A DNA stretch of 64,000 nt, from the IMG/VR virus record IMGVR_UViG_3300023174_000039, positions 124,001-188,000 of that record; one strand, written 5' to 3'. Made by a program: the position numbers and the translations under genes. The notes under the pieces are model-generated. The model was not told the DNA's origin. It saw only the letters and a list, made by a program, of their open reading frames with translations, and ran no database searches. Below, piece by piece: positions 18,099 through 58,600 of this stretch (positions are counted from its first letter, which is position 1; each line of letters starts with the position of its first letter).

Positions 18099-18100
18099 AT

Positions 18101-19852
18101 ATGCAAACAAAAGAATATATTGTTATCCTTGAGAAAGGTATTAATTACGACCAAGTATGGACAGATATAGAATCACCTACTAACGGGTTACCTCACATAC
18201 CAGATCGTCCAGTAAGCATTTTAAATAATCTAGATGCATTTAATCGTATGTGCTCTTATGCCCTAACAGATAATGAAGTAGAGAAATTAAAGCAAGATCC
18301 AAGAGTTGTAGGAGTTGAAGTTCCAATTGAACAAATGCCCGGAATTGAAATTAAAGGATTTACAGTTCAAAATCCATCAACCTACAGCCCTCCAGGTAAT
18401 TTTACAAAACCCGCAACAAGTTCATCTGCGGGTACAAGTATAAATTGGGGATTAATACGACATAGTAATCCTACTAATGTTTATGGCACTACAACTACTA
18501 CCTCATTAAATTATGACTATGCGTTGGATGGAACAGGTGTAGACGTAGTGATTTCAGATTCCGGAATTCAAGCAGACCATCCAGAATTTCAATACACAGG
18601 AAACTCTACCTCTAGGGTACAGCAAATAGACTGGGCTAGCTATGTTCCAGCACTCTCAACCGTGGGAAATTGTTACCAAGACAACAATGGTCACGGGACT
18701 CACGTTGCTGGAACGGCAGTAGGAAAAACGTATGGCTGGGCCAAAGGCGCTCAAATATATTCTATACTTGCCTATGGCACCGGTGCCCCTACTGCGCTCA
18801 ACCAATTTTCTGCAATTAAGCTATGGCATCAATCTAAGGGTGCAACAGGCAGACCTACTGTAGTTAACATGAGTTGGGGATCTATCTACCCTTGGTATTA
18901 TTTAGGGAATCTGCCTTCCAATACATCACCTACATTGTCTAATGTAGTGTTAGCTATGAATAATTTCTTATCAACAGTTACTAGCGTTACTTGGCAAGGT
19001 AATACTTATGCTGGCAATGTTAATGTTACAAGTAGAGGCCTATTACTAGACACAACCAATGCTAACTGTGTGAATAGTTTTTATGCCGGTATCCCATCTC
19101 ATACTTTGCAAACTGATGTTGCTCTTGCTGATTTAATTGATTCAGGAGTAGTTGTAGTTAATGCTGCCGGAAATAGTTATTATAAAATTGATATCCCAAC
19201 CGGCGTAGATTATAACAACTATGTCACCACTACTAATGGAAATATTTTATATCAGCGAGGTAGTAGTCCAGGAACTGCAAATGCGATCTGTGTAGGCGCC
19301 CTTAATTCAGTATCCTACAGTTCTACGCAAGATCAAAAAACTGCATTTTCTAATACTGGGCCCGGTGTGGATATATATTCTGCTGGTAATTGTATAATGA
19401 GTTGTACTACAAGCAATGTATCTGCAACATTGTATGCTACTTCATCGCCATACTTTTTAAATAATGGTTACAGACAGCTAAACATAAACGGGACTAGCAT
19501 GGCAAGCCCGCAAATTGCTGGTATGGCAGCATTGTATTTGCAAGCTCATCCACCTGCAAATAATCTTAGTTCAGTTAATTGTACACAAGTGAAATCTTGG
19601 ATAACATCTAGTTCTACAAGCACTATGTATTCGCCTGGCAATGCAACCACTTATACTAATTTTACATCGACCCTTGGCGGTAATGCTATAACTGCATACC
19701 AACCAATTCAGGGACTTACTCAAATCAAAGGAACAGGTAACACCTGGCAATCTCCTGCTAATATTAGTATAAAAACTAGTGCAAACACTTGGACCACAGT
19801 CAACAAGGTATGGACCAAGACCACAGCTAATACCTGGATTCAGACATATTAA
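18101..19852 (+). CDS. subtilisin-like S8 serine protease
   Basis: Catalytic triad motifs VISDSG, HGTHVAG and GTSMASP; oxyanion motif AAGN; propeptide-like N-terminus. Confidence 0.92.
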   Translation: MQTKEYIVILEKGINYDQVWTDIESPTNGLPHIPDRPVSILNNLDAFNRMCSYALTDNEVEKLKQDPRVVGVEVPIEQMPGIEIKGFTVQNPSTYSPPGNFTKPATSSSAGTSINWGLIRHSNPTNVYGTTTTTSLNYDYALDGTGVDVVISDSGIQADHPEFQYTGNSTSRVQQIDWASYVPALSTVGNCYQDNNGHGTHVAGTAVGKTYGWAKGAQIYSILAYGTGAPTALNQFSAIKLWHQSKGATGRPTVVNMSWGSIYPWYYLGNLPSNTSPTLSNVVLAMNNFLSTVTSVTWQGNTYAGNVNVTSRGLLLDTTNANCVNSFYAGIPSHTLQTDVALADLIDSGVVVVNAAGNSYYKIDIPTGVDYNNYVTTTNGNILYQRGSSPGTANAICVGALNSVSYSSTQDQKTAFSNTGPGVDIYSAGNCIMSCTTSNVSATLYATSSPYFLNNGYRQLNINGTSMASPQIAGMAALYLQAHPPANNLSSVNCTQVKSWITSSSTSTMYSPGNATTYTNFTSTLGGNAITAYQPIQGLTQIKGTGNTWQSPANISIKTSANTWTTVNKVWTKTTANTWIQTY

Positions 19853-34973: not shown

Positions 34974-36166
34974 TGAAGATCACAGACGTTATTAAAGAAG
35001 ATGTTGCTCTTGAAGGTGAAGTTGTTCCACTGGGTAAAAAACATCGTGGTGATCTAGACAGCGTAAATTCATGCTCCAAGTGCGGTGGCAAGTTAGAAGG
35101 CGGAACATACATGGGGCAAAGAATCAAAGTATGCCAACCATGTAAGCAAGTTTATCTACCACCTAACAGCGGTATTGATCAACAGGGTAATAAAATTAAA
35201 GAACAAGGTGTGGCGGAAGGCTCATTGCGTGAACAGGCCAGTAAATTATTGTCTGCTGAAGATAAAGATGGCGTGATCACTATCATAGTACAAGCACCCG
35301 ATGGTACCAAGAGATCAGTAGCCGATACCAATCCAAACTATATCAATAGATGGTTAATGAAATATGGACTACGACTTCCTGCCAGTATTACCAGCAAGTT
35401 TGTGGGTGTGACAGAAGAATTCAGACCCACCACAGGGCAAGCCATGGGCATACGCAGTCAGACTGCACAAAAGATGAATCCTGGCAGCAGTAAATTCATT
35501 TGGAAACGACCAAATCAAATCATGGGCAGTCACACTGAAAATGAACTTCGTGCATTGAAATTTAGGTACTCAGCCAAACACAACGTCTGGGGCGGCACAC
35601 AACAGATGTGGAGTCAACTGGAGGGCACACTAAAAGAATTTGCTCCCAGTGCTCCTGGTGGTGCTGATCGCGGAGGTGGCAACTACTTTAAATCTTTGGC
35701 CCAGGCCTGGTATTATAATGGCGTACACGACTTTGATCTACAAGGTGGTGTCAAGACTCAACAAGACGTGGAACGCTTGCTACAACGTGGTATTGTATGT
35801 CCTGATGGTGTCACACGCAAGTTTGGAATAGATTACAATTCAGGTTTTAACGGTGTCGTGATATCCAGCGATGATTACTATGAACATTCTGATCATGGCA
35901 AACGACCTGGTACAATGATAGATGTTCGCACCGGGCGGCCCTGGGGACCATATGATTATATGGAATTCTCTGAAGATGATTTGGACGAAGATGTAGAAGA
36001 AGGCATCCGTGTGCCAGCACAGCAGATCTTGGGCACAAAAAACCGTGCGCAGTCAGCTTACTATCCCACCAATGTCAAGCCCAAGGTGCCTAAACTAGAC
36101 ACTCCCCTGACAGACAAGGAACTGGCAAGACTCTCACAGTTGGCCGGTGTCAACACAAATAAATAA
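34973..36166 (+). CDS. modular putative internal-head polyprotein (Zn ribbon plus several modules)
   Basis: MKITDVIKE start; CSKC...CQPC; linkers QGVAEG, GVTEE and LKEFAP. Confidence 0.65.
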   Translation: MKITDVIKEDVALEGEVVPLGKKHRGDLDSVNSCSKCGGKLEGGTYMGQRIKVCQPCKQVYLPPNSGIDQQGNKIKEQGVAEGSLREQASKLLSAEDKDGVITIIVQAPDGTKRSVADTNPNYINRWLMKYGLRLPASITSKFVGVTEEFRPTTGQAMGIRSQTAQKMNPGSSKFIWKRPNQIMGSHTENELRALKFRYSAKHNVWGGTQQMWSQLEGTLKEFAPSAPGGADRGGGNYFKSLAQAWYYNGVHDFDLQGGVKTQQDVERLLQRGIVCPDGVTRKFGIDYNSGFNGVVISSDDYYEHSDHGKRPGTMIDVRTGRPWGPYDYMEFSEDDLDEDVEEGIRVPAQQILGTKNRAQSAYYPTNVKPKVPKLDTPLTDKELARLSQLAGVNTNK

Positions 36167-36172
36167 CATATC

Positions 36173-37465
36173 ATGAAAATAAACGACGTTGTTACATTAA
36201 TGGAATTTGGTGCTCCCGGCAGTCGCGCACTGGGCACTGGAAACTTTGCTCTGCTACACCGAGCCTATGTGAACAAACGTCCTAGACTCAGTAGATACTT
36301 GCAGTTGGATTTTGGCAACAATCAAATTATCGAACTTGACGATGATGACATTGAAGCAGTGGCCAACTACTATGATACATTGCCCACAGATCAAGATCGA
36401 TACACCTTTGTGTACGATGTCATGAGTCGTGGGGACAAATTTGATGCATTGTTGAAAAAACTGGGTCGCAGATCTGGTGCTCCTGAGCAACCCAGCTTGC
36501 TGGAGCAAAGCGACGACCCTGATCTAAGTCGCAGTGGTGTGCGTAGTGCGGCATTGAGCACAGCTTTGCGCCAGGCCTACGCCAAGTATCCACAAGCACA
36601 GAGTGATATCGAAGCCTTGATCATGCACGACATGGATGTTCAAAAAGACACCAAACAAGAGCTACAGGCACAAGATAAAATAAATCAACGTCAGGACGAT
36701 ATTGATGTGCAACTGCGCAATGTTGCCGGTAAACAAAGCAAAAAGATTTCCAGCTTAGATCAAGAAAATGATGACTTGACAGCAGAACTAGATCGGCTCA
36801 GCAGAGAACTGGATGCCATGCATGCTCAAACAGGTTCTGAACCTGAGCGCAAGAAACGCAGTGACAGCAAGGGCCAGCCTCCAGTGTACAACGTCAATAT
36901 CAAGTCAGCTGATCGTGCTGAAAAATCACAACAACGAGCAGCCGATGCTGAAAAACGCAAACCAGAACCAGCAAAACTCCGTCCAGGTGCCAGCACATTC
37001 AAACCTGTGGGATCTACTTTGCCCGTGACTCCTGCGGTCAAGCCACCTGCACCCACTATCAACGTGATTGATCGTCCAGATCCCAGTGCTGCCATGAGTC
37101 AAGTGGCATTTCAGGCTCCTGCCCCGCAACCAGACATTGCATTGCCTACCAAGCTGGGAGCAGATCTTGATGAGCCTGAAACGGACGCAACTCAACCAGA
37201 TCTGTTTGCAGAACCCAAAGATAACATAACGGTAGATCAGCCCGTGCCGCAAAGCATGTCCTCAATAGATGCTGAACCTGAACCTGAATTGCCGCCCAAC
37301 GTTACTAACCTGGCCACTCGCCGCAACAGAGTTGCAGAACCAGGCAGTGATCAGTATCGTAGAGACACTGTGGACCGAGCAAGAGATCTCATGCAAAAAC
37401 AAATGGCCATGCACGAAGCACAAGACTTGCGCCGCATGCAAAAACTAGCAGGATTACTGCAATGA
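36173..37465 (+). CDS. putative internal-head/core protein, coiled-coil plus Pro-rich
   Basis: MKINDVVTLME start; ends LRRMQKLAGL. Confidence 0.65.
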   Translation: MKINDVVTLMEFGAPGSRALGTGNFALLHRAYVNKRPRLSRYLQLDFGNNQIIELDDDDIEAVANYYDTLPTDQDRYTFVYDVMSRGDKFDALLKKLGRRSGAPEQPSLLEQSDDPDLSRSGVRSAALSTALRQAYAKYPQAQSDIEALIMHDMDVQKDTKQELQAQDKINQRQDDIDVQLRNVAGKQSKKISSLDQENDDLTAELDRLSRELDAMHAQTGSEPERKKRSDSKGQPPVYNVNIKSADRAEKSQQRAADAEKRKPEPAKLRPGASTFKPVGSTLPVTPAVKPPAPTINVIDRPDPSAAMSQVAFQAPAPQPDIALPTKLGADLDEPETDATQPDLFAEPKDNITVDQPVPQSMSSIDAEPEPELPPNVTNLATRRNRVAEPGSDQYRRDTVDRARDLMQKQMAMHEAQDLRRMQKLAGLLQ

Positions 37466-38670
37466 AAATAAATCAGATTATACACGAAGCAGGTACTGGA
37501 TTAGAAATTGATCGTAGCATTCCTGGCCGCACTATTGCCAGGATCAGTGGAGATCTAGCACACAGAACAGGGTCTCTGACAGATAAAAGATTACCTGATC
37601 ACCATCCTGATGATGATTATGTTCCTTGGTCTGGCAAGGTAGGTGCATCAACCCGTGATGACGAAGAAGACACGTTTGATATAGATTACACCGGCGACGA
37701 TGGTGAATTAAACGAATTTGTTACGCCACAAGCAGTGGCACAAGATCCTGGACTAGAACGTGAAAAGGATGTGGATGTTATTTTCTTTGGCTTTATGCCC
37801 CAAGACTTCACTGCCCGAACTGCATGGAAGGCACTAGAAGATGTGTTGCCTAGAGAATATCCTGCTGGTAGTGAACGAGCACAAAATAAAATAGCAGAAG
37901 TTAGCAAGAATAATGGTGCCGTAGTCACAACCAAGCCCCTGAGCATAGCACAGAAACTGGTTAAAGAATTCCAAGCACGTGGCATCAAGTGTAGAATTGA
38001 TGATTCAGGTCTGGAAGAAGACATAACCCGCAGAGGATTCTTGAAGGGTGCAGGAGCAGCCGCTATGGCAGCAGCCGGCGGATCAGCACTAGGCCAGTCC
38101 ATACAAATGCCCACAGTAGACCAAGTTGACAGACAAAAAATGACAATTGTGGTAGATGGTCAAGAGTATCCCTTAGTCATATTATCTCCTACAGACTTTA
38201 GACCACGTGGCGGACAACAATTGCATATAACCTGTGCGCAGATGGGCGAACGCTGTATGGGTAGATATGATGCTGTGTTAGCACAAAACCGAGTGTTTGT
38301 GTTGCCAGGAACAAAGCCACCGGTTATTCCAGCCGGAGTTGACGAAAGTCGCCGAGGCAGCATGCCTGAGCCTGAAAACTTTGACAGTGACTGGGACTAT
38401 GAAGACGCTATGACACGTTGGAGAAACAGCGACTCTGACCAAGACATTGACTACGAGAATATAATAGACGATGAACCTGATGACTGGTTTGACGAATCTC
38501 GAGAGAAAGTAGGCAATATGGATGCTGATGCATTTGATGCTGCCTTGTCACGTATGAAAAAGCTAGCCGGTGCAGGTCCGCTAAAGACCGTGTATGATCC
38601 CAACAAACGTGTGTACCGAAATGTACCGCATGCTGTGCAACCCGCACAACAACCCAAGAAGGCAAGATAA
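37462..38670 (+). CDS. modular putative internal-head polyprotein with an internal Tat signal
   Basis: MKINQIIHE start; internal LEE-DITRRGFLKGAGAAAMAAAG. Confidence 0.65.
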   Translation: MKINQIIHEAGTGLEIDRSIPGRTIARISGDLAHRTGSLTDKRLPDHHPDDDYVPWSGKVGASTRDDEEDTFDIDYTGDDGELNEFVTPQAVAQDPGLEREKDVDVIFFGFMPQDFTARTAWKALEDVLPREYPAGSERAQNKIAEVSKNNGAVVTTKPLSIAQKLVKEFQARGIKCRIDDSGLEEDITRRGFLKGAGAAAMAAAGGSALGQSIQMPTVDQVDRQKMTIVVDGQEYPLVILSPTDFRPRGGQQLHITCAQMGERCMGRYDAVLAQNRVFVLPGTKPPVIPAGVDESRRGSMPEPENFDSDWDYEDAMTRWRNSDSDQDIDYENIIDDEPDDWFDESREKVGNMDADAFDAALSRMKKLAGAGPLKTVYDPNKRVYRNVPHAVQPAQQPKKAR

Positions 38671-40073
38671 TGAAGATAAAAGATTTTCAAACAGAATCAT
38701 GGAGCGAAAAATACAAGAACAGTATCAACTGCTCGCACCCCAAAGGTTTTAGCCAACGTGCGCATTGTGCCGGCAAAAAGAAGCATAATGAATCTGTTGA
38801 AATGGAAATGGTGTGTGAAGACTGTGGCATGTGCAAGTCACATGGTAGTCTCAATGAAATTCGAAAGGGTCAAAAAGACTCAAATGGCTACACACGTTGC
38901 TGGCCTGGCAAGCATGCCGAAGGTACCAAAAAGGGCAAGAATGGCGGCCAAGTTCGCAACTGTGTGCCCAATGAAAGTGTAGCGGAAGCAGATATGAGTC
39001 GCAGAGGTTTCCTTGGTGCGTTGGCAGGTGCAGGTTTAGCTGCCGCAGGATTAGGTGCCAGTGGTAATGCTCAGGCAGGCACCAACGATGCGGCATTTTT
39101 TAACAAAGTAAACGATCTACATCAAAAAACAGCTCAAACAAATCCTCGTTATGCCAAAGAACATGCATCCTTGAACATAGGTATTGTTAGAGGCATGTCT
39201 GGTGCCTCTGCTGAAAACAACAAGCAATGGGCACAAAAAACTGCTCAACTGTTACAAAAATACGGAGTTGCTGTAAACGAAAGTGTAGTAGAAGGTGAAC
39301 AGCGTGTGGATTCACTTGTGACCGACGCACTGAAAATCATGCAGGGTTCAGAAGTAACTGATGCTGTGCAAGCACTAAAGACTGTGCTGGGAGATAGAGA
39401 GTATAACGGTCGCCGTGGTCATTATAATTTCTATATTAGACAAATAATGGATATGTATAACCAGCAAGGCCTAGCAGAAGACTTCAACGGTGAATACGAT
39501 GACGAAGCAGGCATGGTCAAGAATAACCTTCACACTATTATTCGCGTGTTGACACACCTGGGCAAAGATATCGACAACAACGAAAATTTCCCTGAATGGG
39601 TGCAAGAAAAGATTGCCATGATCAAGCAAACCAGTGTTGAAGTTATGAACTACATGATTAGTCAGCACAAAATGGACGTTGATCCTGAAGTAGAAGAAAT
39701 GTACGAAGCCATGGATCAACTGGCAGAAGAAATGGCAGCCAAAAAAGGCATCAGTGCTGACCTAGTATGGGAAAGCTTCGAAGCTCTAGACGATCACATG
39801 CTGTACGAAACAGCCGCCTGGCGCAGAAAAGAAGGCAAGAGCAAAAAGGGCGGCCTAAACGCCAAAGGTGTTGCTAGCTATAGACGCGAGCATCCTGGTT
39901 CAAAACTGCAAACAGCAGTGACCACAAAGCCTAGTAAATTAAAGCCTGGATCAAAAGCAGCCAAGCGTCGCAAGAGTTTCTGCGCACGTATGTCAGGTGT
40001 TAAAGGACCTGCCAAAAAGCCCAACGGTGAACCCACACGCAAGACTCTGGCCTTGCGCAAATGGAACTGCTGA
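38670..40073 (+). CDS. modular putative internal-head polyprotein with an internal Tat signal and basic Cys modules
   Basis: MKIKDFQTE start; VAE-ADMSRRGFLGALAGAGLAAAG...AQA; C-terminal RRKSFCARM...LRKWNC module. Confidence 0.65.
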   Translation: MKIKDFQTESWSEKYKNSINCSHPKGFSQRAHCAGKKKHNESVEMEMVCEDCGMCKSHGSLNEIRKGQKDSNGYTRCWPGKHAEGTKKGKNGGQVRNCVPNESVAEADMSRRGFLGALAGAGLAAAGLGASGNAQAGTNDAAFFNKVNDLHQKTAQTNPRYAKEHASLNIGIVRGMSGASAENNKQWAQKTAQLLQKYGVAVNESVVEGEQRVDSLVTDALKIMQGSEVTDAVQALKTVLGDREYNGRRGHYNFYIRQIMDMYNQQGLAEDFNGEYDDEAGMVKNNLHTIIRVLTHLGKDIDNNENFPEWVQEKIAMIKQTSVEVMNYMISQHKMDVDPEVEEMYEAMDQLAEEMAAKKGISADLVWESFEALDDHMLYETAAWRRKEGKSKKGGLNAKGVASYRREHPGSKLQTAVTTKPSKLKPGSKAAKRRKSFCARMSGVKGPAKKPNGEPTRKTLALRKWNC

Positions 40074-40723
40074 TGCTGGTTGATGAACTGTTTACCACGT
40101 CGTGGCTGACAGAATCCACGGACTCTGCACCTGATCTTGACCGGATCTTGGTAGACCTGTGTGCCATGGTTGTAAAGGGTAAGCAACGCAAGCCCGACTA
40201 CTACGGCATGGTTGCGGCTGCTGTGGTTGATCCCAAAGGCCGTGTGGTCCGGGCTGTGAATCACTTTGATGACGCAACTGACAAACGCATACATGGTGAA
40301 CGTGCTGCCATTCAAGCGTATGAACGCCGGTACGGTCGAGTCACACCAGATTGTACTATAGTAACCACCCTGAGTCCTTGCAGTGAGCGCATGGACGATC
40401 GTTATGGTGAGAGCTGTGAAGATCTTTTAGATGACTATGGTATCACTGATATCTACTGTGGCTATCAAGACCCCACACAAGACTCGGGCTACACAGTTAC
40501 TAGCAATGAAAAAATACAGGAACTGTGCAAGGCCTTTGCTGACACGTTCCTGGGTGATCAACAACTGGATGAACTCAGCTTCTTGGGTAGCCCTTGCACC
40601 AAAGACTGTTCTGGGCATCGCGCAGGATATGATTGGTCAGCACGTAAAGGCAACATCCCGGGCACGAGCCCTTACAGTCCCAGCTTCAACAACGGCGCCA
40701 ATTTAAGAGCCGCTGGCAAATAA
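40073..40723 (+). CDS. Zn-dependent nucleotide deaminase-like protein plus a small C-terminal module
   Basis: HGERAAI...TTLSPC...C deaminase motif; start MLVDELF coupled by TGATG. Confidence 0.75.
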   Translation: MLVDELFTTSWLTESTDSAPDLDRILVDLCAMVVKGKQRKPDYYGMVAAAVVDPKGRVVRAVNHFDDATDKRIHGERAAIQAYERRYGRVTPDCTIVTTLSPCSERMDDRYGESCEDLLDDYGITDIYCGYQDPTQDSGYTVTSNEKIQELCKAFADTFLGDQQLDELSFLGSPCTKDCSGHRAGYDWSARKGNIPGTSPYSPSFNNGANLRAAGK

Positions 40724-41452: not shown

Positions 41453-41576
41453 TAAAAAATTTCCGTGTTAGGTAAATAAAAGTACAATACCACTAAAAAT
41501 TTTGTGGCTCTTGTGTTTTTCTAATACATATTTAACTTATGTATCACATACGTCAAAAATTTTCAAAAGGATCAAA

Positions 41577-42554
41577 ATGAAACGATTATTAGCTATATTG
41601 GCACTGGTTCCTATGCTGGTGTTTGCTCAGTCTTGGACCCCGCCCAAGACAGTCACTGCCATAGTGGGAAATGCACCCGGGGCAGGCAACGAAATTGCAT
41701 TTAGAAAAGCCGCAGAGATTGTGACACGCACAACAGGCATTAACTTTGTGATAGAAAACCGCCCGGGTGCAGACAGTGTTATTGCCATGAACATGATGAT
41801 GACCAAGCCCAGTGACGGAAGTGTTGTGGCACTGCCCAGTCACATGAGCACCTATGTCACAAATGATATCTGGGAAAAGAATGTCAAGAAATTTGAATGG
41901 AATAGTTTTGAAGAAGTCTTAAGCTATGGCAAAGCACCATTGGTGGTTGTGAGTGCTGCCCGTAGTTCAATTAACACGCCAGCAGATTTGCTAAAGATGT
42001 TTCAAACAGTTGACAGGCCCATTAATGTGGCCATCGGCGGTGGTGCACATAGAATGGCGTTTGAGTACATGATGGTTAAAACTCGAGCAGATCGCAATCA
42101 AATCAAACATATCAAATTTAATGGACCAGCACAAGCGGTGAGCAGTGTGGCTGCATATGATGGCAAAATTGGCACAGAACTTGGTATTATGCCTGCTGCC
42201 ATTGCTCTGCCCCTGGTGCAAGCAGGCAAGGTCAAATTCATTGGACTAACAGGCACAAAGAAACTACAACAAATACCCACAGTACCTTTGCTAAGTGATG
42301 CTATACCTGGTGTTATGGCACAGGCAGGGTGGAATCTTGTGTTGCCACCCATGACACCGCGTCCCATTGTTGATTGGTATGTGAAAGAATTTGGCCGTGC
42401 ATTAAAGACACAAGAATATCGCCAATGGGCCGAAGACAACTTAATTATAGTAGACGAAAAGGATCACACTCCCGAAGGAGTGCGAGCACACATGGCAGAC
42501 TTGCGCCAGCGATTCTTGCCCATGGCACAGTATATTTCACAAGAAGGCAATTGA
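41577..42554 (+). CDS. Bug/TctC tripartite tricarboxylate transporter substrate-binding protein
   Basis: Signal peptide; PGAGNEI, VIENRPGA, GKVKFIG and LVLPPMTP motifs. Confidence 0.85.
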   Translation: MKRLLAILALVPMLVFAQSWTPPKTVTAIVGNAPGAGNEIAFRKAAEIVTRTTGINFVIENRPGADSVIAMNMMMTKPSDGSVVALPSHMSTYVTNDIWEKNVKKFEWNSFEEVLSYGKAPLVVVSAARSSINTPADLLKMFQTVDRPINVAIGGGAHRMAFEYMMVKTRADRNQIKHIKFNGPAQAVSSVAAYDGKIGTELGIMPAAIALPLVQAGKVKFIGLTGTKKLQQIPTVPLLSDAIPGVMAQAGWNLVLPPMTPRPIVDWYVKEFGRALKTQEYRQWAEDNLIIVDEKDHTPEGVRAHMADLRQRFLPMAQYISQEGN

Positions 42555-48161: not shown

Positions 48162-48938
48162 ATGACCGATCATTATGCCGCCTTAGGTGTGCCTCGAACT
48201 GCCAGTGCAGATGAAATTAAACGAGCATTTCGCAAGTTGGCCAGCCAGCACCATCCCGACAAAGGTGGAGACACTGCCAAGTTCCAGGCCATCCAGGCAG
48301 CCTATGCCACTATAGGTGATGAACAAAAACGTGCCGAGTATGATAACCCGCAACCACAGTTTGGTGGATTTGGCGGCGGGCATCCACAGTTCAACGATAT
48401 CTTTGCACAGATGTTTGGAGGTGGTGGGTTTCCAGGACAACAGCCACGCAGAAATCATGTGCGTATGACCTTGTATGTGAGTCTGTTGGACATAGCACAG
48501 GGTGGACGTAAACCCGTGAGCATAGGCACAGCACAAGGACAAAGCACCATTGAAATTGATATCCCATTGGGATTAAATGATGGAGACAATGTGCAGTACG
48601 CTGGGCTTGCACCTGGCGGACAGGATCTGGTGGTCACTTTCAGAACACGGCCAGACCCGGTATGGGAACGAGACGGACTTAATCTAACCAGAGAATACAC
48701 TGTGAGTGTTTGGGATCTAATCTTGGGCACAGATGTCGATGTGCAGAACATACTGGGACACACTCTGACAATTCGTGTGCCTGCTCGTTGCCAACCAGGT
48801 ACTGTGTTACGATGCCGCGGCCAAGGCATTAGAGATCGTCGTGGTATTCAGGGCGACATGTTTGTGAAACTACGAGCAACTATTCCGGATAACCTCCCAC
48901 TCGAATTACTGGAAGCAATAGAAAAATATCGGCAATAA
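48162..48938 (+). CDS. dnaJ: DnaJ-class chaperone (J domain plus C-terminal domain, no Zn finger)
   Basis: HHPDKGG motif, G/F-rich region and DnaJ_C domain. Confidence 0.9.
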   Translation: MTDHYAALGVPRTASADEIKRAFRKLASQHHPDKGGDTAKFQAIQAAYATIGDEQKRAEYDNPQPQFGGFGGGHPQFNDIFAQMFGGGGFPGQQPRRNHVRMTLYVSLLDIAQGGRKPVSIGTAQGQSTIEIDIPLGLNDGDNVQYAGLAPGGQDLVVTFRTRPDPVWERDGLNLTREYTVSVWDLILGTDVDVQNILGHTLTIRVPARCQPGTVLRCRGQGIRDRRGIQGDMFVKLRATIPDNLPLELLEAIEKYRQ

Positions 48939-49011
48939 ATATTTTCGTAATGGTTGCTTGTTGTTGATCAACACAGTATAATAACAATATAATTGGTAAA
49001 AAAGGAACTTG

Positions 49012-51273
49012 ATGCAGAACAATCCTGAAGTAGAACAAGTGGTTGAAACCGCTGTTAATTTGGCTAGAGAAAAACAGCACGAATACGTGCTGACCGAACA
49101 CCTGTTGCTGGGCATGTTACGACACATGCCATTTAGGCGAGTGGTTGAAAAGTTTGGTGCCGATGCTGACCTACTGGATATTGAATTAAATGTATACCTA
49201 GACAGTCAGGTCAACCTAGTTAGCAACGCCAAAGATGTCCAACCTCGCAAAACACAGGCGTTGGAACGTATCTTTAATCGTGCCAATGTGCAGGTGATGT
49301 TTACCGGTCGCAGAACCATGAATGTGATTGACATTTATCTGAGCATCATGGCCGAAACCAATAGTCATGCACATTACTTTTTGCTCAAGTACGGTATTCG
49401 CAAAGCAGAATTCATCGAGTTCTATCAAAAGAATCACCAGCCCGAGAGTGTGAAAATGAATGCCCAGCAGGCCACAGACATTCTGGAAGAGCATTGCACA
49501 AACATTTCAGCAATGGCAGCCAAGAATCAGTTAGAACCCTTGATTGGTCGCAGTCAAGAACTGGAGGACATGATCACTGTGTTGGCACGGCGCTTCAAGG
49601 CCAATGTGCTCATGGTAGGTGATCCTGGGGTGGGCAAAACTGCCATCATCGACGGACTTGCACAAGAGATACACAACAACTGTGTGCCCGAGTTCCTTAA
49701 AGGACACGAAGTATGGGGTCTTGAGATTGGGTCATTACTGGCAGGAAGCAAGTATCGCGGAGAGTTTGAAGAAAAGTTCAAGCAGGTTATTGCCGCACTA
49801 GAAGCCAAGAAGAACTGTATATTGTTTGTGGATGAAGCACACACCATGCGTGGCGCAGGATCATCGGGACAGAGCAACTTGGACTTTGCCAACATGCTGA
49901 AACCAGCAATTACCAAGGGCAACCTCAAAGTCATTGCATCAACCACTTGGGAAGAATACTACGAGAGTTTTGAAAAGGATCGTGCCTTGATGCGCAGATT
50001 CCACAGACTGTCAATTGATGAACCCAATGATGCAACCACAGAACAAATCCTCATTGGGCTGAGTCCACGACTAGAAAAGTTCCACAATGTCATGATTGAT
50101 ACAGAAGCCATGACAGCGGCTGTGGAACTGAGCGGACGTTACATTCATGACAAAAAGAATCCCGACAAATCAATTGACTTGTTGGATGGTGCTTGTGCTC
50201 GACAGCGTGTGCGGGATGCAGGACTGGTAACAGTTACCAAAGACATGATCATGGCGCAGGTCAGCAAGGTAGCAGGTGTGCCCATGGATCGCTTGCAGAA
50301 CGAGCGTAGCACAAACATTGTGGATCTTGAAAGCAATATCAAGCAGAAGCTCTACGGCCAAGATGCCGCTGTGGATTCAGTGCTAGAGCGTGTGTACATT
50401 AACTTTGCAGGCATTGGTGCAACAACTCGCCCTATGGCAAGTTTCCTGTTCTTGGGTCCAACAGGTACAGGCAAAACAGAACTGGCCAAACTGCTGAGTG
50501 AAAACTTGGACATGAAACTGCTCAAGTACGACATGAGTGAGTATCAAGAAAAGCACACAGTATCCAGCTTGATCGGTGCGCCGCCAGGTTATGTGGGCTT
50601 TGAGGATGGCAATGTAGGTGGCGGCAAGCTGATCAGTGATCTTACTAAAAACCCATTCTCGATTATCTTGTTTGATGAAATTGAAAAAGCACACCCTGAT
50701 GTTTCCAATATCCTGTTGCAGATGCTGGACGAAGGACACATCACAAGCTCTGCAGGCAAGCGTGTGGATGTCAAAAACACCATCATTATCCTGACTTCAA
50801 ATTTGGGTGCGCGAGACAACGAAAGCAATGCCATTGGTTTTGGATCACAGGAAAAGACCGGCAACGAAGACCGGGCAATGAAAGAGTTCTTCAAGCCTGA
50901 ACTGCGTAATCGTATTGATCAGATCTGTAGATTTAACAAGCTGGACCGGCTGGCCATCAAGAAGATTGTGATCAAGTTTGCAGATCAACTCAAAGCCAGT
51001 TTAGATGAAAAACACATTCGACTCACACTCAGTGAAGATGTCATAGACATGCTGGCCGACAAAGGCTACGATCCCAAGATGGGTGCTAGACCCTTGGCAC
51101 GCAAGATTGATGAATTGATCAAAGTACCTTTATCTAAGAAAATTCTATTTGATCGACTCGGCAACTGCGAAGTGTTTGTGACCATGCAAGGTGATTCAGT
51201 ACATTTTGAATCTGTTGCACACCTTGTGCCCGTGGTAGACAACGATGGCATTATCCGATTCCCAGATGTTTGA
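49012..51273 (+). CDS. clpA: ATP-dependent Clp protease ATP-binding subunit ClpA
   Basis: Clp N-domain; two AAA modules (GDPGVGKT, GPTGTGKT); LIGAPPGYVG; MGARPL. Confidence 0.92.
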   Translation: MQNNPEVEQVVETAVNLAREKQHEYVLTEHLLLGMLRHMPFRRVVEKFGADADLLDIELNVYLDSQVNLVSNAKDVQPRKTQALERIFNRANVQVMFTGRRTMNVIDIYLSIMAETNSHAHYFLLKYGIRKAEFIEFYQKNHQPESVKMNAQQATDILEEHCTNISAMAAKNQLEPLIGRSQELEDMITVLARRFKANVLMVGDPGVGKTAIIDGLAQEIHNNCVPEFLKGHEVWGLEIGSLLAGSKYRGEFEEKFKQVIAALEAKKNCILFVDEAHTMRGAGSSGQSNLDFANMLKPAITKGNLKVIASTTWEEYYESFEKDRALMRRFHRLSIDEPNDATTEQILIGLSPRLEKFHNVMIDTEAMTAAVELSGRYIHDKKNPDKSIDLLDGACARQRVRDAGLVTVTKDMIMAQVSKVAGVPMDRLQNERSTNIVDLESNIKQKLYGQDAAVDSVLERVYINFAGIGATTRPMASFLFLGPTGTGKTELAKLLSENLDMKLLKYDMSEYQEKHTVSSLIGAPPGYVGFEDGNVGGGKLISDLTKNPFSIILFDEIEKAHPDVSNILLQMLDEGHITSSAGKRVDVKNTIIILTSNLGARDNESNAIGFGSQEKTGNEDRAMKEFFKPELRNRIDQICRFNKLDRLAIKKIVIKFADQLKASLDEKHIRLTLSEDVIDMLADKGYDPKMGARPLARKIDELIKVPLSKKILFDRLGNCEVFVTMQGDSVHFESVAHLVPVVDNDGIIRFPDV

Positions 51274-55694: not shown

Positions 55695-58600
55695 ATGAAC
55701 ATCAACGAACTAGATTCCTATAACCTTGCCGATGCTGTTAAGTTTAATGAAGAACTTAACCCACGCATCTGGCAAGGTTCTCGCATGCGCCCAGAAGTGC
55801 GCCGAAAATTACTGGCCATTGCTCGAGATTTTAAACAAAGTCTAGGACTCAGTGACCTAGAAGTCAAAGACATCACACTCAGCGGAAGCAACGCTGGTTA
55901 CACATATACCCCGCACTCGGATATTGACCTACACCTTGTGGTAGATGTTCCACAAGCAGAAACTGACGAAGTGTATCGTGAGTTGTTCAATGCCAAAAAG
56001 TACCAATATAATGATGAGCACAACTTGGCCATTGGCGGCTATCCTGTTGAGTTGTATGTTCAGCCGGCCAATCAAACACATCACTCACAAGGAATCTATT
56101 CAGTATTAAACAACGACTGGACTGCTATTCCTCGCAAGCGAGAAAGCACAGTGAATGACGGTGCTGTAAAAAGCAAGTACGAACTCATGAAGCATCGTAT
56201 TAACTCTGCCATCAACAGCGGCAACATCAAACAGTTGACCAAAACTGCCGCACGTATCAAACAAATGCGGCAAGCAGGTCTAGACAAAAACGGTGAACTG
56301 GGTCCTGAGAATCTGGCCTACAAAATGTTGCGTACACAAGGGCTGATTGAAAAGTTGTACACTGCTCGCACCGCGGCCAAAGATCGGCTGCTGAGTCTAC
56401 AAGAGCAACCTGTGGCAGAACACGTAACGTACGGTTTTGCAGAAGATGCAACCATATCTCCTTACGGTGTTAGTCCCACGACACAGATGTTTCTAAATGA
56501 AACAGGTGACAGTGAACAAACTGTACATGATTTTATTTCTCATACCGCTGAACAACTGGGCATTGAAAACATGCCGCATATTGAATTGCACACAGACCCT
56601 GAATGGTCAGAACGTGAACACAGCTTTGGTCGTTACACTCCTGAAACACATACCTTGGAAGTGAACTTGGCCAATCGTCACATCATGGACATCCTGCGTA
56701 CCACAGCACACGAACTGGTACATTGCAGACAACATGAACTATCTCCACTGCCCAACGAAGCAGGAGAAACTGGCAGTCGTTGGGAAAACGAAGCACATGC
56801 CAAAGCTGGGGTGATCATGCGTGACTATGCTGATGCCAATCCTGAAAAGTTTGGCGAACATGCCCTGGCAGAAGCATCAGGATATATTCCCACTAGGGCG
56901 CAGGTTCGAGATCCACGTTTCAGTACTGCACTTACTGTGGATGTGCATCCAGGGCAAACAGGCAAGGAAGCCAACAAGATGGCTTTGCAAACAGATGCAC
57001 AAGGTCGTCCTGCCTTGTTGACGAAGGGGCTGGCAAATCAACTGCACGAAGAGTTTGCACAGTTTGATGAGTCAACTGCGCTATTTGAAATCAAAATGAC
57101 CGGCAAGAACCTGCGAGCCGAAGCTGCCAAAACAGGTGCCATTGCCGGCATGGAATTTGAAATGATTGTGCCCAACATGGAGGGCGACCCTGACGATGAT
57201 CAGGAAATGGAGCCTGATTGGGAATATGATGAAAGTGTTATTAGTATTGATGATGCATGTAACTTCTTTGAAAACGGTGAGGGCAACACCAGTGGTGACA
57301 TTAGACGCCTGCGTGAACGCATGCAAAACTATTATTACGATTGGTTAGATGAGCAGTTTGACAGTCGCTGGGACGGCGATGAGTTAGAGTTTATTTACAA
57401 CTACATTAAAGAAAATGCCAGCGCAGAAGAAATTGCAGAAATATTGGGCACAGAACCCAACGAAGATGGTGAGTATCCTGACCCAGGTAAACAAGATTAT
57501 CTTGATGCCGCAAACAAAATTAGCGAACAAGGCTACGACAACCAATGGTATAGTCAAGCACGTGAAGACGCACAAGAAGATTATAACAGAAATGCTGACC
57601 AAGAACGAGAATGGCTAGCAGACCAAGACATCAACACCATGAAGGATGTGATGGACACGTTTGGCAATGTCAATTGGCCTTACTACTATAATTCCAATGT
57701 CGGTGGTGATAGAAGTATAGATGATGTGGCTAATGATTTCCAAGACGCAATAGGCCGTGATGTTCAAGCTAGCACTAGATATCACTCAGGGAGTGTGGAT
57801 AGACCCAGCCCAAGTTCACATCATTATGTGGTCGAGCCCGACGGCAGTTTAGATGGCGACAACTACGGGGACCGAGGCCTGGAGTTTGTGAGCCCACCAT
57901 TGCCCATTGATGTAATCCTTAATGATCTAAGCAAAGTCAAACGCTGGGCAGACAGCTATGGTTGCTACACTAACGATTCAACTGGATTGCACATCAATAT
58001 TTCAGTGCCTGAATACAACAGAGACAAGCTGGACTTTGTAAAGTTGGCTATCCTGATGGGCGACGAACATGTGTCCGACAGCTTTGGACGATTAGGTGCA
58101 TACTACGCAAAAAGTGCTATGGCTGCAATTCGCGACAATGTTCGCAGTCGCCCTGAGGCCGTGACAGATGCCCTGGAAAAAATGCGAACACACATGAATA
58201 CAGCGGCATCAAAAGCTATTCATGCCGGTGTGACTCAGAAATTTACCAGTATCAACGTCAAAGACGGCCACATTGAATTTCGCTCACCTGGCGGTGATTG
58301 GTTGGGCGAGAACTTTGACAAGATTGAAAACACCCTGTTGCGTTTCACAGTGGCCATGAGTGCTGCCTTAAACCCAGAAATGTATCGCGAAGAATACCTG
58401 AAGAAACTGTACAAGTTATTGACTCCGGAAGGACAGAAAGACGAGTACGGAGACATGATCGAAGAGTTCTCCAAGTACATGGTATCACTGCAAGGCAGTG
58501 GTGCAGAAGCGAGTGGCAAGTTGAGCAAAGAAACACAGCAGGCCATCAAGGACTTTAGAACAGCGGCCAGCAAAGAACTAAAACAAAAAAATCTGGCCAA

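What the first reader, a model, noticed from the sequence alone, without database searches (positions are those of the whole stretch)
38011..38346. Cryptic internal Tat signal peptide 1, directly behind a predicted cleavage site and with no Met
Seen: in the middle of ORF 37462-38670 the sequence reads GLEE/DITRRGFLKGAGAAAMAAAGGSALG-QSI. This is a textbook (S/T)RRxFLK motif with an h-region and c-region. It is followed by a domain of about 80 aa with two Cys, ending at another site (GVDE). No in-frame ATG lies immediately before the RR. Established: Tat signals act at the N-terminus and export folded proteins. Inference: head maturation unmasks the signal, so the injected, already folded module is exported by host TatABC to the periplasm. 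It could act in superinfection exclusion or envelope remodelling, or it could jam the Tat translocase. I know of no described precedent.
Basis: partly seen in the sequence, partly recalled or inferred. Interest (0 to 1): 0.87.

Follow-up and report, generated by a model that had tools for sequence, protein, structure and literature searches.

The report
Hidden export signals inside phage polyproteins
A late-gene protein of an uncultured giant phage has a genuine twin-arginine (Tat) export signal in its middle, directly behind a protease-type cut site and in front of a swappable cargo domain; dozens of uncultured phages share this design, which suggests that cutting the protein turns its pieces into cargo bound for the periplasm.

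Summary
Residues 187-211 of ORF 37462-38670 form a Tat signal that scores above the TIGR01409 cut-off. It starts 186 residues into the protein, and no usable start codon lies nearby.

Comparative data make it much more than a chance motif. All 37 Tat junctions found in homologous proteins have Glu 2-4 residues before the RR and L/V/I/M at P3. P2 varies, which is the T4-type prohead-protease pattern.

The signal is the first element of a swappable cassette. The cassette sits between a ClpS-fold carrier module and a conserved C-terminal module, and a second [VM]-x-E site closes it. In relatives the slot is empty, or it holds a cargo without a signal such as DnaJ, or it holds a Tat signal with a different cargo: GH19 muramidase, TonB/TolA C-domain, M48 peptidase or a lipoprotein.

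A metagenome survey found 53 such junctions, 37 of them internal. In cellular genomes the same motif is rare and always N-terminal.

The N-terminus (MKINQIIHE) resembles T4 capsid-targeting propeptides and a virion-detected head-core protein of phage PA5oct.

Three steps are inferred and untested: cleavage, packaging and injection, and Tat export. No phage precedent was found in the literature searched.

The parts
36159..36165 (+). ATAAATA, a motif like a T4 late promoter, 14 nt before the ATG of ORF 36173. It probably drives ORF5, ORF6 and ORF7, whose starts and stops overlap.
   Evidence: the same motif lies 9-14 nt upstream of 5 of 43 gene starts, where about 0.1 is expected. Searches show the overlapping stop/start codons at 37462 and 38670.
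37462..37488 (+). N-terminal leader MKINQIIHE, ending in I-H-E9. Putative capsid-targeting propeptide.
   Evidence: The same M-K-I-x-[DQ]-hydrophobic...E start is found on ORFs 34973, 36173 and 38670. It is also found on PA5oct gp333, a 73-aa protein detected by MS that lies between portal and S77 protease, and on the equivalent small ORF in dozens of jumbo-phage head modules. T4 gp24 starts MAKINELLRE.
37489..37716 (+). Module A: an acidic, disordered insert bounded by IHE9 and LNE85. It is absent from many homologs.
   Evidence: Alignment A1; AF2 pLDDT below 55.
37717..38019 (+). Module B: a carrier domain with a ClpS-like beta-alpha-alpha-beta-alpha-beta fold (core residues 100-180). It starts at the conserved Phe86 and ends in G-L-E-E186.
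   Evidence: AF2 pLDDT about 90. The Foldseek top 30 hits are ClpS, with TM 0.75-0.78 and rmsd about 2.5 A. No sequence-level ClpS signal was found.
38011..38019 (+). L184-E185-E186: putative endoprotease site with P3 hydrophobic and P1 Glu.
   Evidence: 37 of 37 junctions have P1=E, P3=L/V/M/I and a variable P2. In the metagenome survey 51 of 53 have P3=V/L/I/M. T4-family prohead proteases cut after Glu (PMC5694885).
38020..38094 (+). Tat signal peptide D187-G211. The n-region is DIT, the RR is at 38029-38034, the h-region is rich in Gly and Ala, and the c-region is A-L-G followed by Q.
   Evidence: TIGR01409 27.8 bits against a 16.7 cut-off. Pfam TAT_signal 22.2 bits. The segment is disordered in AF2.
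38095..38337 (+). Cargo: a small all-beta domain of six strands. Function unknown.
   Evidence: AF2 with alignment A4 gives pLDDT 84. No PDB fold match; best E 0.86. 32 homolog clusters, mostly C-terminal domains of phage-like proteins.
38338..38346 (+). V293-D294-E295: a second putative protease site that closes the cassette.
   Evidence: A [VM]-x-E is present at this boundary in every A1 member that has a cassette.
38347..38670 (+). Module C: a conserved acidic stretch followed by the basic tail ...SRMKKLAGAGPL...QPKKAR. Includes the stop codon.
   Evidence: This is the most conserved part of the family. The L-x-R-x-x-x-LAG motif is also found at the C-termini of ORFs 34973 and 36173.
38976..39077 (+). 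Second internal junction, in the neighbouring ORF 38670-40073: S-V-A-E106 followed by ADMSRRGFLGALAGAGLAAAGLGASGNAQA.
   Evidence: TIGR01409 gives 19.5 bits on the fragment. The slot carries no Tat signal in relatives L012 and L013.

Best explanation
ORF 37462-38670 is a late-expressed, modular carrier polyprotein of a T4-related jumbo phage. Its modules are a short N-terminal leader, an optional insert, a ClpS-fold carrier domain, a swappable cargo cassette and a conserved C-terminal module. [L/V/I/M]-x-Glu sites separate them, of the kind that T4-family (Peptidase S77) prohead proteases cut.

In this phage the cassette is a complete Tat signal peptide plus an 80-aa beta domain. Cutting after LEE186 and VDE295 would release a fragment of about 11 kDa whose new N-terminus (D-I-T-R-R-G-F-L-K...) is a working Tat signal. 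Host TatABC would then export the folded cargo to the periplasm, and signal peptidase would trim it after A-L-G211.

The most likely timing is as follows. The leader and flanking modules take the protein into the prohead. The prohead protease cuts it there. The fragment is ejected with the DNA into the next host and is exported there as a ready-made envelope effector.

Shown: the signal, its conservation, the cassette architecture, the flanking site pattern and the envelope-type cargo of relatives.

Inferred: cleavage, packaging and ejection, Tat dependence, and what the cargo does.

My confidence is about 0.6 for the core claim, that this is a real export signal unmasked by endoproteolysis, and about 0.45 for the whole chain including capsid delivery.
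For: (1) The Tat signal is genuine: TIGR01409 24.8/27.8 bits against a 16.7 cut-off, and Pfam TAT_signal hits in 9 of 10 homologs and in 39 of 53 survey pieces.

(2) Selection keeps every part of the signal while the cargo changes. A c-region A-x-A/G is present in 35 of 37 junctions, and P0075 has the lipobox LAGC.

(3) The junction rule holds. P1=E and P3=L/V/M/I in 37 of 37, with P2 variable and a spacing of 2-4 residues. In an independent DNA-pattern survey of metagenomes, P3 is V/L/I/M in 51 of 53 junctions, 37 of them at least 45 aa into the ORF.

(4) The same pattern in 185,579 cellular genomes gives only 7 hits. Five are real ORFs, and all five are N-terminal.

(5) The cassette architecture is clear. 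The slot is empty in P0006, P0009 and P0012, filled with DnaJ in P0028, and filled with a Tat signal plus unrelated cargo in the others. It is always closed by [VM]-x-E. The same Tat+cargo cassette also sits in the unrelated DUF6321-type scaffold, in P0121.

(6) At least four polyproteins carry two signal-bearing cassettes in one chain, each behind an x-E site. That needs proteolytic separation.

(7) The cargo domains act on the envelope: GH19 x10, TonB/TolA C-domain x4, M48 x3, LysM/SLT.

(8) Links to the capsid. The leader matches PA5oct gp333, which was MS-detected and lies between portal and S77 protease, and T4 gp24. The gene cluster follows homologs of the PA5oct virion proteins gp189 and gp188. 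A late-promoter-like motif lies upstream. A DUF6321 protein is annotated as a virion protein in cyanophage S-SCSM1, whose virion proteome was determined by MS.

(9) T4, phiKZ and SPN3US prohead proteases cut after Glu, and capsid-targeting propeptides are 10-20 aa long (PMC5694885).
Against: - There is no experimental or proteomic evidence for this protein or any close homolog. It has no relatives in cultured phages.
- I could not retrieve the S77 protease of the window's own contig, so its presence rests on relatives.
- The [LIVM]-x-E motif carries little information. One copy (M-G-E263) lies inside the cargo.
- 15 of the 53 survey junctions follow only an 8-24-aa leader. In those proteins the Tat signal is effectively N-terminal and needs no unmasking. 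Many of them are GH19 muramidases that could simply be secreted endolysins, which weakens the reading of the leader as a capsid address.
- The cargo domain also occurs with no signal in other phage proteins.
- Tat can handle signals with N-terminal extensions, so cleavage is not strictly required.
Confidence: 0.45

Rival explanations
1. The signal works uncleaved, in the cell that produces the protein. It inserts as a loop into TatBC. The N-terminal leader and the ClpS-fold module stay in the cytoplasm, the cargo (with module C) crosses the membrane, and signal peptidase releases it. The protein is never packaged.
For: Internal Tat signals and N-terminal extensions are tolerated: the Streptomyces Rieske protein and the thylakoid loop mechanism, cited in PMC13186574. 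Short-leader relatives show that the same signals can act at an effectively N-terminal position. Late expression fits envelope work at the end of infection.
Against: It does not explain the invariant P1 Glu and hydrophobic P3 directly before the signal. It does not explain the second [VM]-x-E that closes the cassette. It does not explain chains with two signal-bearing cassettes. It would also drag the highly acidic and basic module C across the membrane. In cellular genomes the same motif is never internal.
Confidence: 0.17
2. The protein is cut at the x-E sites, but in the cytoplasm of the producing cell. The protease could be the prohead protease outside capsids, the phage subtilase, or a Clp system engaged through the ClpS-like module. 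The fragment is then exported in the same cell, as timed release of envelope effectors (lysis, exclusion) late in infection. Nothing is injected.
For: It rests on the same junction evidence as the best explanation. GH19, SLT and LysM cargo look like lysis enzymes. The phage encodes an S8 subtilase, a ClpA/B-like ATPase and a DnaJ-like protein. Module B has a ClpS fold and a conserved Phe at its predicted new N-terminus.
Against: T4-type prohead proteases are active inside proheads (established knowledge of gp21). The leader and the link to the head-core protein point to packaging. A masked signal is not needed simply to secrete a protein.
Confidence: 0.17
3. The hydrophobic RR segment is not an export signal. 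It is a membrane-insertion or TatBC-docking element of an ejection protein that helps to build or position the DNA conduit at the inner membrane.
For: Ejection proteins of other phages carry transmembrane segments (SPN3US gp47; PMC5694885) and form trans-envelope conduits (the P22 and T7 literature listed).
Against: Conserved signal-peptidase sites, and a lipobox in P0075, argue for cleavage and release. The cargo domains are soluble periplasmic domains. The slot is empty in close relatives, so it is not an essential conduit part.
Confidence: 0.07
4. An internal translation start produces a separate protein with an N-terminal Tat signal. The long ORF is a nested-gene arrangement.
For: The residue two positions before the RR (Ile188 here) is I, M, V or L, all of which can be encoded by start or near-start codons. 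ORF 38670-40073 has an ATG there. Shine-Dalgarno pairing at both sites (-3.5 kcal/mol) is close to the window's median for real starts, -4.1.
Against: In ORF 37462-38670 and in three relatives whose DNA I read, the codon is ATA or ATC and the Glu codons are GAA, so there is no GGAGG. Ile is the commonest residue at that position, 18 of 37. The nearest canonical start lies more than 60 codons upstream. The P2 variants MMPE, LGE and LKE destroy any Shine-Dalgarno reading.
Confidence: 0.03
5. The motif is a non-functional relic of a captured host gene fused into a phage ORF.
For: Phages do capture host genes. This window carries a TctC-family periplasmic binding-protein gene at 41502-42554.
Against: The n-, h- and c-regions are all conserved across dozens of diverged proteins with unrelated cargo. 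The signal's position relative to the x-E site is fixed.
Confidence: 0.02

Closest known systems
T4 internal proteins (IPI-III), Alt and gp24 with capsid-targeting sequences processed by the gp21 (Peptidase S77) prohead protease
   Same: A short conserved N-terminal leader ending in [L/I]-x-Glu sits on otherwise unrelated, fast-evolving cargo proteins. The genes are late genes. Cleavage is after Glu. Delivery is with the DNA.
   Different: T4 cargo acts in the cytoplasm and has a single N-terminal cut. Here there are several cut sites, carrier modules at both ends, and cargo units that carry their own Tat (or Sec-like) signal peptide. Packaging is not shown.
Multi-site processing of head and ejection proteins in phiKZ, 201phi2-1 and SPN3US
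   Same: These are jumbo phages. Many head proteins are cut at x-x-Glu motifs into fragments, with long propeptides, and paralogs share identical N-termini (PMC5694885).
   Different: The motif there is A/S/G-x-E rather than L/V/I/M-x-E. No export signals have been reported at the new N-termini.
Bipartite transit peptides of thylakoid-lumen proteins (stromal targeting part removed, Tat/delta-pH signal then used)
   Same: Two addresses are read in series on one chain. Proteolysis of the first part leaves a twin-arginine signal at the N-terminus. This comparison rests on my own knowledge; the loop-mechanism reference appears.
   Different: That is a eukaryotic organelle import system. The first address there is a short peptide, not a folded carrier domain. 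No virus is involved.
Internal Tat signal of the Streptomyces Rieske protein
   Same: A twin-arginine signal that is not at the N-terminus mediates transport of the C-terminal domain (PMC13186574).
   Different: In the Rieske protein the signal follows Sec-inserted transmembrane helices of one membrane protein and is not released by proteolysis. Here it follows soluble modules and a protease-type site.
Secreted and SAR endolysins
   Same: These are phage envelope enzymes that use host export signals. Relatives here include GH19 muramidases behind Tat signals. PA5oct itself has a SAR-type endolysin.
   Different: The known cases use Sec-type or SAR signals at the true N-terminus. I found no report of a Tat-signal endolysin.

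Membership tests
Tat (twin-arginine) signal peptide (TIGR01409 / PF10518) | S/T-R-R-x-F-L-K consensus | tested here: met
   T-R-R-G-F-L-K at residues 189-195. TIGR01409 24.8 bits (whole ORF) and 27.8 bits (fragment) against a 16.7 cut-off. PF10518 22.2 bits against 22.7.
Tat (twin-arginine) signal peptide (TIGR01409 / PF10518) | Weakly hydrophobic h-region followed by a c-region with small residues at -3 and -1 | tested here: met
   GAGAAAMAAAGGS then A-L-G followed by Q. Homologs have AMA|Q, AKA|Q and SMA|Q, and one has LAGC.
Tat (twin-arginine) signal peptide (TIGR01409 / PF10518) | Located at the N-terminus of the translated protein | tested here: not met
   The signal starts at residue 187 of 402. 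There is no start codon within 60 codons. It would be met only after cleavage at E186.
Tat (twin-arginine) signal peptide (TIGR01409 / PF10518) | Export that depends on TatABC and on the RR pair | not testable with these tools
   Needs reporter fusions in wild-type and tatC-deleted cells, with an RR-to-KK control.
T4-type capsid-targeted head or internal proteins | Short N-terminal propeptide ending in hydrophobic-x-Glu, shared by unrelated proteins of the phage | tested here: met
   MKINQIIHE, MKITDVIKE, MKINDVVTLME and MKIKDFQTE start four adjacent ORFs. Compare T4 gp24 MAKINELLRE and PA5oct gp333 MKINDIITE.
T4-type capsid-targeted head or internal proteins | The phage encodes a Glu-specific prohead protease (Peptidase S77) | tested here: inconclusive
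   PA5oct gp331 matches PF03420 at 5e-24, next to a gp23-type capsid gene, and hundreds of related contigs carry the protease. The window does not contain the head module. The protease of the window's own contig was not retrieved.
T4-type capsid-targeted head or internal proteins | Protein present in the virion in processed form and ejected with the DNA | not testable with these tools
   No cultured relative exists. Only indirect links are available.
ClpS (N-degron adaptor, PF02617) | ClpS alpha/beta fold | tested here: met
   The Foldseek top 30 hits are ClpS structures, with TM 0.75-0.78, for residues of about 100-180.
ClpS (N-degron adaptor, PF02617) | Sequence-level family membership | tested here: not met
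   No Pfam or NCBIfam ClpS hit. A profile search of PDB sequences finds no ClpS. Identity in the structural alignments is 13-19%. I therefore call it 'ClpS-like fold', not a ClpS.
DnaJ-type phage chaperone (as at the syntenic position in PA5oct) | J domain (PF00226) | tested here: not met
   No J domain in this ORF. Some homologs carry one in the cassette slot. The window's DnaJ-like gene is at 48162-48938.

The most novel reading that the evidence does not exclude
A widespread and undescribed phage delivery route. Head-packaged carrier polyproteins are cut by the prohead protease into cargo units whose new N-termini are Tat (or Sec-like) signal peptides. After ejection with the DNA into the next host's cytoplasm, the host's own translocases send these ready-made proteins on to the periplasm. 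They include TonB/TolA C-domain decoys, peptidoglycan hydrolases, M48 proteases, lipoproteins and small beta domains. This would give envelope remodelling or superinfection exclusion before any phage gene is expressed. The cassettes are exchanged between phages by recombination in the conserved flanks and in the signal-coding DNA.
Probability: 0.33. Interest if true: 0.92.

Novelty: new variant of a known kind. Interest (0 to 1): 0.8.

Why it matters
If the reading holds, phage virions would deliver pre-made proteins to the periplasm as well as the cytoplasm, using a two-step address: capsid first, then Tat. That would add a new class of early-acting envelope effectors. It would provide a natural example of a Tat signal unmasked by proteolysis in bacteria. 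It would also explain a large, fast-evolving family of 'hypothetical' proteins in freshwater, soil and marine jumbo phages.

The design is directly testable, and it is ready-made as a modular scaffold for loading exportable cargo into phage heads. Even under the rival readings, the finding documents two things I found no report of: Tat signals conserved in the middle of soluble proteins, and phage muramidases behind Tat signals.

Tried and rejected
- Cultured relatives. A megablast search of the region and tblastn searches of ORF6, ORF5 and ORF4 against 50,697 cultured-phage records found nothing.
- Internal translation start. This was tested with codon identity, an inventory of in-frame start codons and anti-SD duplex energies. 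The SD energies did not discriminate, because real starts in this phage are often weak (median -4.1 against -3.5 at the site). The codon evidence argues against a start.
- The phage's own S77 protease. The window itself has no portal, capsid or protease gene.
- PA5oct 'head maturation protease' gp212 next to the syntenic region. It proved to be ClpP-like, not the prohead protease. The real S77 gene is gp331.
- Cargo function. The AF2 model is confident, but there was no PDB fold match.
- ClpS membership. Only the fold is supported.
- Exact TATAAATA. It occurs once in the window, which is no more than chance. The looser [AC]TAAATA is enriched just upstream of starts.
- Literature searches for Tat with jumbo phage, ejection proteins, internal signal peptides, endolysins, and DUF6321 gave no phage precedent.
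- The 'GVDE|SRRGS' stretch as a degenerate second Tat junction. Only some homologs have RRG there, so I leave it as unexplained.
Full report
**What is there**

The window is bases of about 124,001-188,000 of a 331,654-bp uncultured viral contig, IMGVR_UViG_3300023174_000039. It has no tRNA genes and an even GC content of about 45%.

The contig is a jumbo phage distantly related to the PA5oct, Atu_ph07 and GAP32 group. ORFs 33805 and 34434 are homologs of the PA5oct virion proteins gp189 and gp188. The clamp loader, gp191, DnaJ-like, ClpA-like and gp185 genes are syntenic with PA5oct.

About 13 kb are inserted between the gp188 homolog and the DnaJ-like gene. The insert begins with four consecutive ORFs (34973, 36173, 37462, 38670). 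All four start M-K-I-[T/N/K]-[D/Q]-hydrophobic...Glu.

**The observation**

NCBIfam TIGR01409 scores it at 24.8 bits in the whole ORF and 27.8 bits on the fragment from D187; the cut-off is 16.7. Pfam TAT_signal scores 22.2 against 22.7.

The DNA is CTG GAA GAA GAC ATA ACC CGC AGA. The closest canonical in-frame start codons are codons 112, 128 and 129, inside a folded domain.

The next ORF has a second case: SVAE106 | ADMSRRGFLGALAG...NAQA.

**Comparative anatomy**

A search of 5.8 billion proteins gave at least 637 relatives, all from metagenomes. Alignment shows a modular protein. In order, the modules are:

- the leader;
- an optional acidic insert (residues 10-85);
- a carrier module (86-186) ending in G-L-E-E;
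- a variable slot;
- a [V/M]-x-E site;
- a strongly conserved C-terminal module, which ends ...SRMKKLAGAGPL...QPKKAR.

The slot is empty in some close relatives, where GLEE is joined almost directly to module C. In others it holds a J domain. In others it holds a Tat signal followed by entirely different cargo. Flanks that are 70-80% identical carry non-homologous cassettes, which is the signature of cassette exchange.

AlphaFold2 places a confident beta-alpha-alpha-beta-alpha-beta domain at residues 100-180 and leaves the Tat segment disordered. The best PDB matches for that domain are ClpS structures, with TM 0.75-0.78. No sequence method sees ClpS.

The cargo (residues 212-292) folds as a six-stranded beta domain with pLDDT 84 and has no PDB counterpart.

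**The junction rule**

In the 37 retrieved proteins with a Tat-type junction:

- Glu lies 2-4 residues before the RR in all 37.
- The residue two before that Glu is L, V, M or I in all 37.
- The residue between them varies (D, E, P, T, G, K).
- 35 of the 37 keep an A-x-A/G motif at the end of the h-region.
- One has a lipobox, LAGC.

An independent scan of the metagenome collection used the back-translated pattern E-D-x-[S/T]-R-R-G-F-L-[K/Q]-G. It gave 105 stretches. After removing bacterial N-terminal signals and noise, 53 unique phage-type junctions remain. Of these, 37 lie at least 45 residues into an open frame, and 15 follow 8-24-residue leaders of the same M-[K/R]-x-x-[D/E]-hydrophobic-hydrophobic-x-E type. 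P3 is V, L, I or M in 51 of the 53.

The identical scan of one genome from each of 185,579 prokaryotic species gave 7 hits. Five are real ORFs, and each has its Met 2-7 residues upstream. Internal placement is therefore a property of these phages and not of Tat signals in general.

**Cargo**

Pfam finds the following behind these signals: GH19 muramidase (10), TonB or TolA C-terminal domains (4), M48 metallopeptidase (3), and LysM and SLT. All of these act in the envelope.

The window's own cargo domain recurs in about 30 protein clusters. In those clusters it sits behind Tat signals, behind a second, Sec-like internal signal ([L/I/V]-x-E | G-W-K-E-K-LGAAALAGSMALGSAGA-Q-A | R-V-T-P-D-G; 14 cases), or with no signal at all.

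The same Tat+cargo cassette also sits in the other scaffold type, which has a DUF6321 C-terminus as ORF 38670 does, in P0121. That scaffold has its own slot, NCVPxESV[A/E]E | ... | V-x-E | G-x-QRVDSLV. The slot carries a Tat signal in the window and none in two syntenic relatives.

At least four polyproteins carry two signal-bearing cassettes in one chain.

**Link to the capsid**

PA5oct has a T4-like head module. Its gene order is portal, a 73-aa protein, a 270-aa protein, a Peptidase S77 protease (PF03420, 5e-24), a putative scaffold and a gp23-type capsid protein. The 73-aa protein was detected in virions by mass spectrometry and starts MKINDIITE. The equivalent small ORF in dozens of related head modules starts M-[K/R]-[L/I/F]-N-[D/E]-[F/I].

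T4 gp24 starts MAKINELLRE, and T4 Alt and gp22 also open with short segments ending in hydrophobic-x-Glu. Such 10-20-residue propeptides are the capsid-targeting sequences, and T4, phiKZ and SPN3US proteases all cut after Glu (PMC5694885; PMC3012670).

A T4-late-promoter-like ATAAATA lies 14 nt before ORF 36173. ORFs 37462 and 38670 follow with overlapping stop and start codons.

A DUF6321 protein next to the large terminase gene of cyanophage S-SCSM1 is annotated as a virion protein, and that phage's virion proteome was determined by mass spectrometry.

**Interpretation**

The simplest account of all this is a carrier polyprotein. Its cassettes are set free by a Glu-specific endoprotease, most probably the prohead protease. 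Each freed cassette then presents its own signal peptide at the new N-terminus.

I rate the core claim at about 0.6. The core claim is that this is a functional export signal unmasked by proteolysis. I rate the whole chain, including packaging, ejection and export in the next host, at about 0.45.

The main rivals are these:

- Loop-type use of the uncleaved internal signal in the producing cell. This is possible in principle, but it does not explain the flanking sites or the two-signal chains.
- Cleavage and export within the producing cell as a late-infection device. The GH19 cargo and the phage's Clp/DnaJ genes make this reasonable.
- A role in membrane insertion or docking.
- Internal initiation is unlikely, because the codon is ATA or ATC, the Glu codons are GAA, and Ile is the commonest residue at that position.
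- A relic is excluded by the conservation.

**Caveats**

- Nothing here is experimental.
- The protease of this very phage was not retrieved.
- The x-E motif is short.
- Relatives with short leaders blur the idea that the leader is a capsid address. A conserved A/U-rich 5' end for near-leaderless late mRNAs is an alternative for its first few codons.
- The cargo's function is unknown.

**Novelty**

Literature searches found no phage protein with an internal Tat signal, no Tat-signal endolysin and nothing on DUF6321. The closest analogues are T4 internal proteins, jumbo-phage head-protein processing, thylakoid bipartite transit peptides and the Streptomyces Rieske internal signal.

I class the finding as a new variant of a known kind: capsid-targeted, protease-processed phage proteins. 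The new feature is that the cargo carries its own embedded export signal. If the injected-then-exported route is proven, it would amount to a new delivery mechanism.

Noticed in passing
window 38670-40073 (junction 38976-39077): The neighbouring ORF has its own internal Tat-like signal (VAE106 | ADMSRRGFL...NAQA), placed in a variable slot between conserved modules. It ends in a DUF6321 domain that is widespread in T4-like cyanophages and pelagiphages. Here an ATG does precede the RR.
   Followed up: partly
window 37717-38019: The carrier module has a ClpS-like fold with no ClpS sequence signature. The nearly invariant Phe86 sits right after the predicted LNE85/ITE cut, so cutting there would expose a classic bacterial N-degron residue. 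The phage also encodes a ClpA/B-like ATPase (49009-51273) and a DnaJ-like protein (48162-48938).
   Followed up: partly
window 29417, 32282, 36159, 43892, 52926: [A/C]TAAATA lies 9-14 nt upstream of five ATG starts. It resembles the T4 late promoter and is so close to the ATG that the mRNAs would be nearly leaderless. The same CTAAATACT-ATG arrangement precedes the metagenomic GH19 genes in L139, L169, L173 and L213.
   Followed up: partly
loci L151, L167, L169, L173, L183, L194, L207, L213, L139: GH19 muramidases of related uncultured phages carry Tat signals, behind an 8-12-aa leader or, in L139, behind a 100-aa N-terminal module. These could be Tat-exported endolysins. I found no report of such endolysins.
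   Followed up: partly
proteins P0032, P0044, P0068, P0108, P0122-P0132, P0138, P0149: A second, Sec-like class of internal signal, [L/I/V]-x-E | G-W-K-E-K-LGAAALAGSMALGSAGA-Q-A | R-V-T-P-D-G, also always lies behind an x-E site. In some chains it occurs together with a Tat cassette.
   Followed up: partly
window 36125-36166, 37427-37465, 38548-38580: ORFs 34973, 36173 and 37462 share a C-terminal motif L-x-R-[L/M]-x-[K/Q]-LAG. PA5oct virion protein gp281 starts MFNINDILRLAGV, and the small head-core proteins carry LNKLRKxREL. The motif may be a second handle that binds the capsid or scaffold.
   Followed up: no
window 38347-38361: Directly after the closing VDE295 site the sequence reads SRRGS, which looks like a decayed copy of the D-x-S-RRGFL junction. 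Only some homologs have it.
   Followed up: partly
window 41502-42554; 18080-19852; 55695-60572; 40061-40723: Other cargo of this phage: a TctC-family periplasmic solute-binding protein with its own N-terminal signal-like segment, an S8 subtilase, a 1625-aa protein with amidoligase and nucleotidyltransferase domains, and a dCMP-deaminase-like protein. The TctC gene hints at a betaproteobacterial host.
   Followed up: no
window 35063-35150 and 38800-38850: Cys-x-x-Cys pairs that look like zinc ribbons occur in the N-terminal modules of ORF 34973 and ORF 38670. Several relatives have them too (for example P0121, L150, L229).
   Followed up: no
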